A stretch of 64,000 nt of DNA, from positions 1,984,001 through 2,048,000 of the forward strand of contig NC_079164.1 in NCBI RefSeq assembly GCF_947568905.1. Direction: 5' to 3'. Position numbers and translations under genes: made by a program. Each line of letters starts with the position of its first letter. The first letter of the stretch is position 1. Positions 41,501 to 43,762 of the stretch are shown piece after piece. The notes under the pieces are model-generated. The model saw only the letters and a list, made by a program, of their open reading frames with translations, was not told the DNA's origin and did no database searches. Source of the DNA: Ostrea edulis. Taxonomy: Eukaryota.

Positions 41501-43762
41501 GTACTGAATGTAACAGTCACATTATGAGTGTGTTTTACTGTGTGTACTGAATGTAACAGTCTCATTATAAGTGTGTTGTACTGTACTGAATGTAACAATT
41601 TCATTATGAGTGTGTTGTACTGTACTGAATGTAACAGTCTCATTATGAGTGTGTTTTACTGTACTTAATGTAACAGTCTCATCATAAGTGTGTTGTACTG
41701 TACTGAATGTAACAGTCTCATTATAAGTATCTTTACGTGACTTTTTCAGATCGTTGTCTGTGCTGTACTGAATGTAACAGTCTCTTTACGTGACTTTTTC
41801 AGATCGTTGTCTGTGCTGTACTGAATGTAACAGTCTCTTCACGTGACTTTTTCAGATCGTTGTCTGTGCTGTACTGAATGTAACAGTCTCTTTACGTGAC
41901 TTTTTCAGATCGTTGTCTGTGCTGTACTGAATGTAACAGTCTCTTTTCGTGACTTTTTCAGATCGTTGTCTGTGCTGTACTGAATGTAACAGTCTCTTTA
42001 CGTGACTTTTTCAGATCGTTGTCTGTGCTGTACTGAATGTAACAGTCTCTTCACGTGACTTTTTCAGATCGTTGTCTGTGCTGTACTGAATGTAACAGTC
42101 TCTTTACGTGACTTTTTCAGATCGTTGTCTGTGCTGTACTGAATGTAACAGTCTCTTCACGTGACTTTTTCAGATCGTTGTCTGTGCTGTACTGAATGTA
42201 ACAGTCTCTTTACGTGACTTTTTCAGATCGTTGTCTGTGCTGTACTGAATGTAACAGTCTCTTCACGTGACTTTTTCAGATCGTTGTCTGTGCTGTACTG
42301 AATGTAACAGTCTCTTTACGTGACTTTTTCAGATCGTTGTCTGTGCTGTACTGAATGTAACAGTCTCTTCACGTGACTTTTTCAGATCGTTGTCTGTGCT
42401 GTACTGAATGTAACAGTCTCTTCACGTGACTTTTTCAGATCGTTGTCTGTGCTGTACTGAATGTAACAGTCTCTTTACGTGACTTTTTCAGATCGTTGTC
42501 TGTGCTGTACTGAATGTAACAGTCTCTTTACGTGACTTTTTCAGATCGTTGTCTGTGCTGTACTGAATGTAACAGTCTCTTCACGTGACTTTTTCAGATC
42601 GTTGTCTGTGCTGTACTGAATGTAACAGTCTCTTTACGTGACTTTTTCAGATCGTTGTCTGTGCTGTACTGAATGTAACAGTCTCTTTTCGTGACTTTTT
42701 CAGATCGTTGTCTGTGCTGTACTGAATGTAACAGTCTCTTTTCGTGACTTTTTCAGATCGTTGTCTGTGCTGTACTGAATGTAACAGTCTCTTTACGTGA
42801 CTTTTTCAGATCGTTGTCTGTGCTGTACTGAATGTAACAGTCTCTTCACGTGACTTTTTCAGATCGTTGTCTGTGCTGTACTGAATGTAACAGTCTCTTC
42901 ACGTGACTTTTTCAGATCGTTGTCTGTGCTGTACTGAATGTAACAGTCTCTTTACGTGACTTTTTCAGATCGTTGTCTGTGCTGTACTGAATGTAACAGT
43001 CTCTTTACGTGACTTTTTCAGATCGTTGTCTGTGCTGTACTGAATGTAACAGTCTCTTCACGTGACTTTTTCAGATCGTTGTCTGTGCTGTACTGAATGT
43101 AACAGTCTCTTCACGTGACTTTTTCAGATCGTTGTCTGTGCTGTACTGAATGTAACAGTCTCTTCACGTGACTTTTTCAGATCGTTGTCTGTGCTGTACT
43201 GAATGTAACAGTCTCTTCACGTGACTTTTTCAGATCGTTGTCTGTGCTGTACTGAATGTAACAGTCTCTTTACGTGACTTTTTCAGATCGTTGTCTGTGC
43301 TGTACTGAATGTAACAGTCTCTTCACGTGACTTTTTCAGATCGTTGTCTGTGCTGTACTGAATGTAACAGTCTCTTTACGTGACTTTTTCAGATCGTTGT
43401 CTGTGCTGTACTGAATGTAACAGTCTCTTTACGTGACTTTTTCAGATCGTTGTCTGTGCTGTACTGAATGTAACAGTCTCTTTACGTGACTTTTTCAGAT
43501 CGTTGTCTGTGCTGTACTGAATGTAACAGTCTCTTTACGTGACTTTTTCAGATCGTTGTCTGTGCTGTACTGAATGTAACAGTCTCTTTACGTGACTTTT
43601 TCAGATCGTTGTCTGTGCTGTGTTTGCTCTCTACAAGTTGTCTCCCTGTTGTTTTTTCCTTGTCGACATGGATGTTGTACCGAGTGTAAAGGTAGACAAC
43701 TCCTCCATCACTGTCCTCGATGTGACCACCATATCAAGGCAAAGATAAACGTTTTCATTTAA
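31326..43762 (+). CDS. IAP-D: inhibitor of apoptosis, truncated BIR + linker + BIR + UBA-like + RING (~495 aa)
   Basis: join(31326..32414,36344..36506,36680..36757,43605..43762) = 1488 nt, GT-AG and phases 0,1,1 as in IAP-C. The 78-nt exon DLRVVTQRDILKYFYEDTEED is the homologue of IAP-C DIRDITPIEILKFFFEADQE. BIR2 is CSFC-x16-H-x6-C. Confidence 0.85.
32481..33625 (+). mobile_element. Helentron-type non-autonomous element with (TTA)n core in IAP-D intron 1
   Basis: 5' hairpin atgttccccaaacaaagtttgggaacat, (TTA)n microsatellite, repeated gcacgcgcgtgc palindromes, and 3' tttggggaacat + hairpin tgtaacggtccccgttaca + ctagtt. Confidence 0.75.
33665..34080 (+). mobile_element. HINE fragment (family of 10780 and 46250-47155)
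   Basis: aggtgacctgagtcac...ctattgctattggtctgcg...gtccgtcgt start and shared internal unit. Confidence 0.6.
34266..34583. mobile_element. Kolobok-like MITE (TTAA target) with an internal degenerate tRNA-like segment
   Basis: ttaa-GGTAGTACTCTACA...TGTAGCATACATCC-ttaa; A/B-box-like tagcgcagcaggttag and ggttctagtcc at ~34372-34430. Confidence 0.55.
35021..35510. repeat. 40-bp minisatellite, 12 copies plus a partial, in IAP-D intron 1
   Basis: Unit acctgactgttggccagtgttgggccttgaatacattagt in exact 40-bp register. Confidence 0.95.
36344..36506 (+). CDS. IAP-D exon 2 (UBA-like)
   Basis: catttttgcag / 163 nt / gtaagc; IASMSATRELQNLSFELPDIVNACREL aligns with IAP-C exon 2. Confidence 0.85.
36680..36757 (+). 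CDS. IAP-D exon 3 (78 nt), preceded by a 52-bp duplicate of its acceptor
   Basis: taattacag / 78 nt / gtaaaa; same length and phase as IAP-C exon 3. Confidence 0.8.
37010..41728. repeat. 39/43-bp satellite, ~4.7 kb (roughly 115 units), in IAP-D intron 3
   Basis: Unit tactgaatgtaacagtctcattataagtgtgttttactg with or without an extra tgtg. Confidence 0.95.
41730..43620 (+). repeat. 53-bp chimeric array: satellite piece + IAP-D RING-exon 3' splice site, 36 acceptor copies
   Basis: Unit gtactgaatgtaacagtctctttacgtgactttttcag/atcgttgtctgtgct; first AG at 41748-41749, last at 43603-43604; 1855 bp = 35 x 53. Confidence 0.92.
43605..43762 (+). CDS. IAP-D terminal RING exon (not in ORF track)
   Basis: Phase 1; DRCLCCVCSLQVVSLLFFPCRHGCCTECKGRQLLHHCPRCDHHIKAKINVFI*, clearly paralogous to the IAP-C RING exon (LFFPCRHGCC). 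Confidence 0.88.

What the first reader, a model, noticed from the sequence alone, without database searches (positions are those of the whole stretch)
41730..43762. A satellite has captured and amplified the 3' splice site of the IAP-D RING exon: 35 stop-containing decoy acceptors precede the real one
Seen in sequence: the 53-bp unit combines a piece of the neighbouring 39-bp satellite (gtactgaatgtaacagtct), the true intron end (ctttacgtgactttttcag) and the first bases of the RING exon (atcgttgtctgtgctgt). There are 36 acceptors at exact 53-bp spacing (exon starts 41750 to 43605). Splicing the phase-1 exon 3 to any of the first 35 gives DRCLCCTECNSLF(T/S)*; every unit variant keeps the TGA. 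Only the last copy gives the complete RING. Each unit also has a branch-point-like TAAC about 25 nt upstream of the AG. Established: the C-terminal RING is the E3 ligase module of IAPs and drives their auto-ubiquitination, and a stop in the terminal exon is not an exon-junction NMD target. Inference: the array could turn IAP-D into a mostly RING-less, stabilised or dominant-negative IAP, with array length acting as a heritable control on E3 activity. It may instead be an inactivating accident.
Basis: partly seen in the sequence, partly recalled or inferred. Interest (0 to 1): 0.85.

Follow-up and report, generated by a model that had tools for sequence, protein, structure and literature searches.

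The report
Oyster IAP intron: 35 repeated acceptors
In a flat-oyster (Ostrea edulis) apoptosis-inhibitor gene, a 53-bp DNA repeat has copied the last splice acceptor 35 times in front of the real one, but the limited RNA evidence shows the cell still uses the real, last copy, so the array looks like a tolerated repeat expansion rather than a switch that removes the RING domain.

Summary
There are 36 acceptors (CAG|ATCGTTGTCTGTGCTGT) at exact 53-bp spacing, with exon starts from 41750 to 43605. All 35 upstream copies read DRCLCCTECNSLF(T/S)* in phase 1.

The gene is Ostrea edulis LOC125664517, with two BIR domains and a RING. My spliced model, which uses the last acceptor, equals RefSeq XP_048753249.2 exactly.

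The array is real. DNA contigs of three other runs carry it at 21-31 times single-copy depth, which fits about 30-45 copies.

The interpretation "mostly RING-less" is not supported:
- One RNA-like run has a contig that leaves the genome exactly at 43604/43605, which indicates splicing at the real acceptor.
- In that run, array depth per copy is about 0.14 of RING-exon depth. This caps decoy use at roughly 14-28%, and unspliced RNA could account for all of it.
- Both RING-exon SNPs seen are synonymous, and exon 1 has pN/pS of 0.25.

Minor decoy use, or an effect on splicing efficiency, stays untested.

The same scan holds 181 unchecked first-reader notes of "decoy acceptor" arrays elsewhere in this genome. 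Tandem repeats cover 18% of this window. A general mutational process, tolerated because the last copy keeps the intact exon, is therefore the best reading.

The parts
31326..32414 (+). Exon 1 of IAP gene LOC125664517 (363 codons, two BIR domains); donor AAG|GTACAG
   Evidence: Pfam BIR, E 1.5e-31, two stretches. 100% identical to P0001 and P0004. The spliced model equals RefSeq.
36344..36506 (+). Exon 2 (163 nt; starts in phase 0, ends in phase 1)
   Evidence: tblastn of homologues; model equals RefSeq.
36598..36719 (+). 52-bp repeat, 2.3 copies, that duplicates the exon 3 acceptor and the first 40 nt of exon 3. The extra acceptor gives an exon start at 36628.
   Evidence: TRF; sequence. Using the upstream acceptor adds 52 nt and shifts the frame, giving a 459-aa product.
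36680..36757 (+). Exon 3 (78 nt, phase 1 to phase 1); donor ACG|GTAAAA
36758..43604 (+). Intron 3, 6847 nt, of which 96% is tandem repeat
   Evidence: The Saccostrea echinata homologue has a last intron of about 95 nt.
37010..41728 (+). Older 39/43-bp satellite: about 115 units, 91% matches, 82-bp higher-order period. It carries the 21-nt core shared with the 53-bp unit.
   Evidence: TRF. Unit census of 54 units of 39 bp and 53 of 43 bp. Core matches.
41726..43621 (+). 53-bp array, 35.8 copies. Each unit is 36 nt of intron end (core, TAAC, pyrimidine tract, CAG) plus the first 17 nt of exon 4. The 35 decoy acceptors give exon starts 41750 to 43552.
   Evidence: Present in DNA of three other runs.
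43605..43762 (+). Coding part of exon 4 (RING, 52 codons plus stop). This is the authentic acceptor, used by RefSeq and by the RNA contig.
   Evidence: Pfam zf-C3HC4_3, E 2.3e-5. Full C3HC4 pattern. RNA-like contig boundary at 43604. Model equals RefSeq.
43858..43869 (+). AATAAA and ATTAAA polyadenylation signals, about 100 nt after the stop. The real terminal exon is therefore about 275 nt.
   Evidence: Pattern search. Not confirmed by reads.

Best explanation
The array is a young intronic minisatellite. It arose by tandem duplication across the intron 3 / exon 4 boundary of the Ostrea edulis IAP gene LOC125664517, next to an older 39/43-bp satellite with which it shares an exact 21-nt core. 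Such duplications add copies upstream, so the last acceptor stays joined to the complete RING exon and its nearby poly(A) signal. That last acceptor is the one used for the main mRNA. I infer this is because only it is followed by a real terminal exon that can be defined (exon body plus AATAAA about 250 nt away); the 35 decoys are each followed after 17 nt by more intron-like repeat. The array is therefore tolerated: near neutral, or at most a modest drag on splicing efficiency. It is not a device that makes the protein RING-less. Shown: the anatomy; the array's presence in several individuals; an RNA contig that breaks at the real acceptor; low array representation in RNA; constraint on the coding sequence. 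Inferred: why the last site wins, how the array arose, and that it is nearly neutral.
For: The spliced model that uses 43605 equals RefSeq XP_048753249.2, 495 aa.

Run X2 behaves as RNA. Its exon 4 depth is 34.9, while a high-copy repeat implies a DNA-equivalent depth of only about 0.46. It holds a 192-nt contig with 125 nt on 43604-43728. The other 67 nt lie to the left and do not fit the stretch, which contained three array units. The contig is therefore not colinear with the array and not joined through a unit. That fits exon 3 joined to 43605.

The array contig in X2 has depth 105.4. Divided by the DNA ratio of 21 from the same sample (X1), that is about 5 per copy, or 0.14 of exon 4 depth.

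Both exon 4 differences seen, 43624 and 43729, are synonymous. Exon 1 alleles give pN/pS = 0.0083/0.0331 = 0.25.

The array is present in three DNA-like runs at 21-31 times single-copy depth; the reference array would itself give 22-25 (my arithmetic).

Tandem repeats cover 18% of the window. The same gene has a second acceptor duplication at exon 3. The scan holds 181 unchecked notes of decoy-acceptor arrays in this genome, which points to a general mutational process.

The Saccostrea homologue has a last intron of about 95 nt with the same exon start, ATCGTTGTCTGTGTTGTGTTTG. The satellites are therefore lineage-specific additions.
Against: The RNA evidence comes from one run and from assembler contigs, not reads. 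Contigs drop rare variants, and their word depth is a poor measure of expression. The letters of the 67-nt loose end were not printed, so its identity as exon 3 is inferred from position only. X2's library type is not on record. Array RNA at 0.14 per copy is not nothing and could include decoy-spliced molecules. By sequence, 18 decoys cannot be told from the real site over -20 to +17, and the upstream ones are transcribed first, so some use would be expected. RefSeq models can ignore multimapping junction reads.
Confidence: 0.6

Rival explanations
1. The decoy acceptors are used in a substantial share of transcripts and give a 457-aa BIR-BIR protein that ends DRCLCCTECNSLFT and lacks the RING. 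This form would be stabilised or dominant-negative, and array length would set the ratio as a heritable dial.
For: The decoys carry the same branch-point-like TAAC, pyrimidine tract, AG and first 17 exon bases as the real site. The stop would lie in the last exon, so no exon-junction NMD is expected (established knowledge). Array sequence is present in the RNA-like run at about 0.14 of exon 4 depth per copy. Depth ratios differ between individuals (21, 24, 31), which hints at copy-number variation. Oyster IAP transcripts from one gene can differ in domain content through alternative splicing (PMC8917759).
Against: An RNA contig breaks at the real acceptor, and RefSeq uses it. If most transcripts used early decoys, array depth per copy would approach exon 4 depth. 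The observed 0.14 caps use at about 14% for the first decoy or about 28% for uniform use, and less once pre-mRNA is counted. The RING exon shows only synonymous differences. No decoy-terminated product exists in the 5.8-billion protein collection, which is a weak negative. Similar arrays are noted all over this genome in unrelated genes, which argues against a purpose specific to IAPs.
Confidence: 0.17
2. Splicing brake, or decoy-exon effect. The 35 acceptors bind U2AF and U2 non-productively, perhaps together with the weak donor-like AAT|GTAACA found in every unit and in every 39/43-bp unit. This slows or blocks removal of the 6.8-kb intron 3. Array length would then lower productive mRNA output or raise intron retention rather than change the protein.
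For: Array RNA is at about 14% of exon depth per copy in the RNA-like run, which fits retained or slowly removed intron. The unit holds both an acceptor and a GTAACA donor-like site 24 nt downstream. The decoy-exon model for intron retention is established in human erythroblasts (PMC6097662, PMC7373989). Intronic tandem-repeat length is associated with splicing variation in human (PMC10078293).
Against: Intron retention was not measured, and the depth of the 39/43-bp satellite in RNA could not be examined. A ratio of 14% may simply reflect ordinary pre-mRNA in the library. The donor-like site lacks G at -1 and at +5. There is no comparison between alleles of different length.
Confidence: 0.18
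3. In-frame micro-exons. Each unit offers a 24-nt cassette, ATCGTTGTCTGTGCTGTACTGAAT, between its acceptor and the GTAACA donor-like site. Including n cassettes would add n copies of an 8-residue Cys-rich block (DRCLCCTE, then YRCLCC...) in front of an intact RING.
For: The frame arithmetic works. One or two cassettes read through to the full RING with no stop.
Against: The donor is weak. The 29-nt gap to the next acceptor is too short for an intron, so at least one unit would have to be skipped. No joint within the last three units was seen in the RNA-like run, and its exon 4 contig does not continue into a unit.
Confidence: 0.02
4. Assembly artefact: the array is a mis-assembly or an over-expansion of a single acceptor.
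For: None. Long exact arrays are a known risk in assemblies.
Against: Three DNA-like runs from at least two other samples each hold the 83-nt (53+30) cyclic contig at 21-31 times single-copy depth. The reference array itself would give 22-25.
Confidence: 0.02

Closest known systems
Intronic VNTRs or minisatellites that influence splicing (spl-TRs in human, PMC10078293; minisatellites linked to splicing decisions in C. elegans, PMC4039745)
   Same: A tandem array of tens of bp per unit inside an intron, next to a regulated or used splice site, probably variable in length. It could alter splice choice or efficiency.
   Different: Here the repeat unit contains an exact copy of the gene's own 3' splice site and exon start, giving 35 full-strength acceptors. 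In the known cases the repeats act through binding motifs or spacing. No effect on splicing has been shown here.
Cryptic or duplicated 3' splice sites created by small tandem duplications across an intron-exon boundary (single-case human mutations; classical duplicated-splice-site constructs; from my own knowledge, not checked here)
   Same: The duplication spans the boundary, so two or more identical acceptors compete. The outcome depends on exon context and proximity.
   Different: There are 35 copies rather than one, the array is carried by several wild individuals, and it is embedded in a 6.6-kb satellite block.
Decoy exons that promote intron retention (PMC6097662, PMC7373989)
   Same: Non-productive splice sites inside a long intron that could engage the splicing machinery and compete with the terminal sites.
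   Different: Decoy exons are single conserved cryptic exons with both sites functional and shown to be required. Here there is an array of acceptors with only a weak donor-like site, and retention was not demonstrated.
NAGNAG tandem acceptors (PMC2699507)
   Same: Tandem acceptors that offer alternative 3' splice choices.
   Different: The spacing is 53 nt rather than 3 nt. The alternatives end the reading frame rather than adding or removing one codon.
Expanded oyster IAP family with varied domain architectures (PMC8917759)
   Same: BIR-BIR-RING gene in a tandem cluster of IAP paralogues; three IAP genes lie in this window. In oysters, domain content can vary by alternative splicing.
   Different: That work does not describe repeat arrays that multiply the RING-exon acceptor.

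Membership tests
IAP (BIR-containing protein with C-terminal RING) | One or more BIR domains | tested here: met
   Pfam PF00653, E 1.5e-31, two stretches in exon 1.
IAP (BIR-containing protein with C-terminal RING) | C-terminal C3HC4 RING | tested here: met
   The C3HC4 spacing pattern is present in the exon 4 translation. Pfam PF13920 gives E 2.3e-5 but 24.5 bits, just under the 27-bit cutoff. 56% identical to the RING of the Saccostrea IAP P0002.
Minisatellite / VNTR | Head-to-tail array with a unit of 10-100 bp | tested here: met
   53 bp, 35.8 copies, 98% matches; exact 53-bp spacing.
Minisatellite / VNTR | Copy number varies among individuals | tested here: inconclusive
   Depth ratios of 21, 24 and 31 in three DNA-like runs. 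These are contig word depths, so they are crude. Long reads are needed.
Alternative 3' splice site (used cryptic acceptors) | Transcripts joined at the alternative acceptor | tested here: inconclusive
   No decoy junction was seen. The one informative RNA contig uses the real site, and the array is present in RNA at about 0.14 per copy. Contigs cannot show absence.
Decoy-exon intron retention | Cryptic exon with functional 3' and 5' sites inside a retained intron | not testable with these tools
   Acceptor plus the weak donor-like AAT|GTAACA are present. Retention and dependence on the sites were not measurable.
Recursive splicing (ratchet) site | AG immediately followed by GT, regenerating a 5' splice site | tested here: not met
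   The junction reads CAG|ATCG in all 36 copies.
NAGNAG tandem acceptor | Two AGs 3 nt apart | tested here: not met
   The spacing is 53 nt.

The most novel reading that the evidence does not exclude
Ostrea edulis may carry a genome-wide class of fast-mutating minisatellites seeded on its own splice junctions, and this IAP array may be one of the largest. If so, array length would act as a heritable, quantitative dial on productive versus non-productive splicing. At this locus the dial would set RING-plus IAP against RING-less IAP or retained intron, and so tune apoptosis control in an immune-relevant gene family. Even if there is no dial, the locus would be a natural experiment: the spliceosome skips 35 acceptors identical over -20 to +17 and picks the 36th, which would show that downstream exon context alone decides the choice.
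Probability: 0.1. Interest if true: 0.8.

Novelty: new variant of a known kind. Interest (0 to 1): 0.42.

Why it matters
If the last of 36 acceptors that share the same core signals is chosen almost exclusively, the locus is a clean natural test of how 3' splice sites are selected: exon definition against first-come-first-served. It would also explain why boundary-spanning repeat expansions can build up in a repeat-rich genome without killing genes. If the decoys are used at an appreciable level, a hypervariable repeat would modulate the E3-ligase module of an IAP. That gene family is massively expanded in oysters and implicated in their immune responses. Either way the locus warns annotators and RNA-seq analysts, because junction reads multimap across the array. 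It also belongs with the many similar, still unchecked arrays noted in this genome.

Tried and rejected
- **Spliced or decoy-terminated products in the 5.8-billion protein collection.** I queried exon 3+4 (78 aa) and exon 2-4 (132 aa). Both searches returned no candidates, which is uninformative.
- **Cluster of the exon 1 protein.** It holds only the RefSeq 495-aa protein and 368-aa products. The contigs fetched for three of the four 368-aa products carry exon 1 with unspliced intron 1 and look like population DNA runs. They give no splice evidence.
- **Is the 39/43-bp satellite a degraded copy of the 53-bp unit (acceptor lost by a 14-nt deletion)?** The tails outside the 21-nt core are not significantly alike: 645 and 2095 of 5000 shuffles did as well. 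Not supported, not excluded.
- **Is the satellite core (reading CCTECNS) derived from the RING codons CCTECKGR?** This is only a by-eye resemblance of about 11 of 18 bases. I did not pursue it.
- **Comparison with the Saccostrea last intron to recover the ancestral intron end.** The exon start is conserved, but the intron is too diverged to say.
- **Read laying design.** I laid only the last three units plus exon 4 and its downstream sequence. All the runs offered were assembler contigs. The run search asked for RNA, but three of the four runs behaved as DNA.
- **Literature searches for arrays of duplicated acceptors.** No direct precedent was found.
- **Oyster satellitome paper (PMC11136912).** It names no 39-, 43- or 53-bp O. 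edulis satellite in the main text.
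Full report
**What is there**

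The window comes from Ostrea edulis. The exon 1 protein clusters with RefSeq XP_048753249.2 / XP_048753250.2, "uncharacterized protein LOC125664517", 495 aa, on a 112-Mb chromosome.

Tandem Repeats Finder reports a 53-bp array of 35.8 copies at 41726-43621, with 98% matches and no indels. Directly upstream lies a 39/43-bp satellite of about 115 units at 37010-41728, with 91% matches.

An exact search finds 36 copies of CAG|ATCGTTGTCTGTGCTGT, all spaced exactly 53 bp apart, with exon starts from 41750 to 43605. Only three unit variants exist: 18 TTTACG, 14 TTCACG and 3 TTTTCG. They differ at two adjacent bases.

With the G that ends exon 3, every decoy reads DRCLCCTECNSLF(T/S)*. The last copy reads the complete RING.

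Eighteen decoys are identical to the real acceptor for at least 20 nt upstream. The other 17 differ at one base, at -15 or -16. All 35 are identical over the first 17 exon bases.

The 21-nt core TGTACTGAATGTAACAGTCTC is shared exactly with the older satellite and occurs only at 37064-43586 in the window: 149 matches against 0.01 expected by chance.

**Gene model**

Exon 1 carries two BIR domains, and the last exon carries a C3HC4 RING. I guided the model with a Saccostrea echinata homologue (P0002) and with the RefSeq protein. The model is:
- exon 1: 31326-32414
- exon 2: 36344-36506
- exon 3: 36680-36757
- exon 4: 43605-43762

Its translation equals the RefSeq protein residue for residue.

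- **Decoy product:** a decoy acceptor would give a 457-aa protein without the RING.
- **Poly(A) signals:** AATAAA and ATTAAA lie about 100 nt after the stop, so the genuine terminal exon is about 275 nt.
- **Intron 3:** it is 6847 nt long, and 96% of it is tandem repeat.
- **Saccostrea comparison:** the whole homologous gene spans 1731 nt there. Its last intron is about 95 nt and ends ...CCTTTCCAG|ATCGTTGTCTGTGTTGTGTTTG.

The exon start is therefore conserved, and the satellites are additions in the Ostrea lineage.

**Is the array real?**

One read-laying run was available. I placed it on 43446-45300, which holds the last three units, exon 4, the 3' UTR and downstream sequence.

All runs were Logan contigs. 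X1, X3 and X4 behave as DNA. Their word depth is flat across exon 4, the UTR and intergenic sequence: 6.45/5.4/5.6, 78/65/80 and 24.5/24.8/24.2.

Each of the three carries an 83-nt (53+30) cyclic array contig, at depths of 135.7, 2449.1 and 596.8. These are 21, 31 and 24 times single-copy depth.

By my arithmetic, the reference array would give 22-25 for such a contig, because about 32 of its 53 words cover the variable site. The other animals therefore carry roughly 30-45 copies. The array is not an assembly artefact, and it may vary in length.

**Which acceptor is used?**

X2 comes from the same sample as X1 and behaves as RNA. Its exon 4 depth is 34.9. Its depth on a very high-copy repeat (44438-44499) implies a DNA-equivalent depth of only about 0.46.

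Its record 10 is a 192-nt contig. Of this, 125 nt lie on 43604-43728. The other 67 nt lie to the left of 43604 and fit nowhere in the stretch, although the stretch held three array units. No joint was reported there.

- A genomic or unspliced molecule would have run on into the last unit.
- A decoy-spliced or micro-exon form would also have matched a unit.
- The break one base before 43605 is what an exon 3 / exon 4 junction gives, because both 36757 and 43604 are G.

The loose letters were not printed, so their identity as exon 3 is inferred from position.

The array contig in X2 has depth 105.4. Dividing by the DNA ratio of the same sample (21) gives about 5 per copy, or 0.14 of exon 4 depth.

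- If the first decoy were used by most transcripts, the ratio would approach 1.
- With uniform use of all sites it would be about 0.5.

The observed value therefore caps decoy use at roughly 14% (first decoy) to 28% (uniform use). Ordinary unspliced RNA could explain all of it. These numbers come from assembler word depths in one run and are rough.

**Constraint**

Both differences seen in exon 4, at 43624 (GTT to GTA) and 43729 (CAC to CAT), are synonymous.

Exon 1 occurs as two allele groups in Logan contigs of nine runs. They differ by 7-8 non-synonymous and 7-8 synonymous changes, giving pN/pS = 0.0083/0.0331 = 0.25.

The gene does not look like a decaying pseudogene, and the RING exon does not look released from selection. 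The sample is small.

**Origin**

The first decoy is preceded by a normal satellite unit...ACAGTCTCATTATAAGTA, and then TCTTTACGTGACTTTTTCAG. Later units read ...ACAGTC|TCTTTACG.

The array thus has two novel joints:
- exon start to core, at ...GCTGT|ACTGAA, with CTGT microhomology
- core to intron end

The simplest history is a boundary-spanning duplication of about 65 bp, then a 12-bp deletion in one copy, then amplification of the 53-bp form. The alternating 0/1 variant order in the first dozen units suggests amplification partly in 106-bp steps.

The near-identity of the units (98%) against 91% in the 39/43-bp satellite says the 53-bp array is the younger. Outside the core the two unit types are not significantly alike. 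Whether the core began in the intron or in the satellite is open.

**Context**

- Tandem repeats cover 18% of this window.
- The same gene has a second boundary-spanning duplication: a 52-bp repeat of 2.3 copies that doubles the exon 3 acceptor. The upstream copy would shift the frame.
- The scan's own notes list 181 "decoy acceptor" observations in this genome. All are unchecked first-reader notes, so I treat them as leads only.

Together these make a general mutational process more likely than a design specific to IAPs. A duplication across an acceptor leaves the last copy attached to the whole exon, so it can be tolerated whenever the spliceosome prefers that copy.

**Mechanism I commit to (confidence about 0.6)**

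The array is a tolerated, recently expanded intronic minisatellite. The last acceptor wins because only it is followed by a definable terminal exon, meaning an exon body plus a poly(A) signal about 250 nt away. This rests on the established coupling of last-intron removal to polyadenylation, which I cite from my own knowledge. The decoys contribute at most a minority of RING-less or unspliced molecules.

**Rivals**

- A decoy-exon-like brake on intron removal: 0.18. The model is from PMC6097662 and PMC7373989.
- In-frame 24-nt micro-exons using the weak AAT|GTAACA donor: 0.02. The frame works, but no evidence supports it.
- Assembly artefact: 0.02, contradicted.

**Novelty**

Intronic repeats that affect splicing are known (PMC10078293, PMC4039745). 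So are cryptic acceptors, decoy exons and varied oyster IAP architectures (PMC8917759). I found no description of a repeat that multiplies a gene's own acceptor 35-fold, although those searches cover open-access text only.

I class it as a new variant of a known kind. Interest is moderate. It would rise if raw-read junction counts or long-read cDNA showed either strict use of the 36th site or measurable, length-dependent decoy use.

Noticed in passing
window 36598-36757: A 52-bp repeat of 2.3 copies duplicates the exon 3 acceptor plus the first 40 nt of exon 3. The upstream acceptor (exon start 36628) would add 52 nt, shift the frame and give a 459-aa RING-less product. RefSeq uses 36680.
   Followed up: partly
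window 32485-33623 (intron 1): A 1139-bp segment of the reference is absent from Logan contigs of at least five runs and from both allele groups (junction 32484 to 33624, with no GT-AG ends). The segment begins with a palindrome, GTTCCCCAAAC...GTTTGGGGAAC. It is probably a MITE-like insertion polymorphism.
   Followed up: partly
window 27211-28565: A 33-bp array of 41 copies with 100% matches. It is strikingly homogeneous and open in several frames. Its function and origin were not examined.
   Followed up: no
window 2652-7008 (-), 13575-17746 (+), 9424-9576 (-): Two more BIR-BIR...RING IAP paralogues flank the gene, and a weak BIR-like fragment lies at about 9.5 kb. This is a tandem IAP cluster. 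The last introns of both paralogues also hold short tandem repeats (3470-3638, 16622-16705).
   Followed up: partly
window 53487-55172 (-) and 60628-62271 (-): Two long paralogous ORFs (562 and 548 aa) rich in Cys/His (B-box/TRIM-like by eye). Each has a related 38-bp tandem array on its high-coordinate side (55831-56093, 62915-63557), which suggests a segmental duplication.
   Followed up: no
window 31326-32414, loci L005-L010: Exon 1 occurs as two allele groups about 1.4% apart in DNA (7-8 amino-acid differences). pN/pS is 0.25.
   Followed up: yes
window 30322-30848: A 52-bp array of 10.3 copies lies about 500 nt upstream of the IAP start codon. Logan contigs of exon 1 all break inside it. 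The period of 52-53 bp recurs three times around this gene.
   Followed up: no
window 43942-44065: The RNA-like run X2 has depth of 10-20 here, downstream of the IAP poly(A) signals, while the 3' UTR itself shows none. This may be an exon of a neighbouring gene or a gap left by the contig filter.
   Followed up: no
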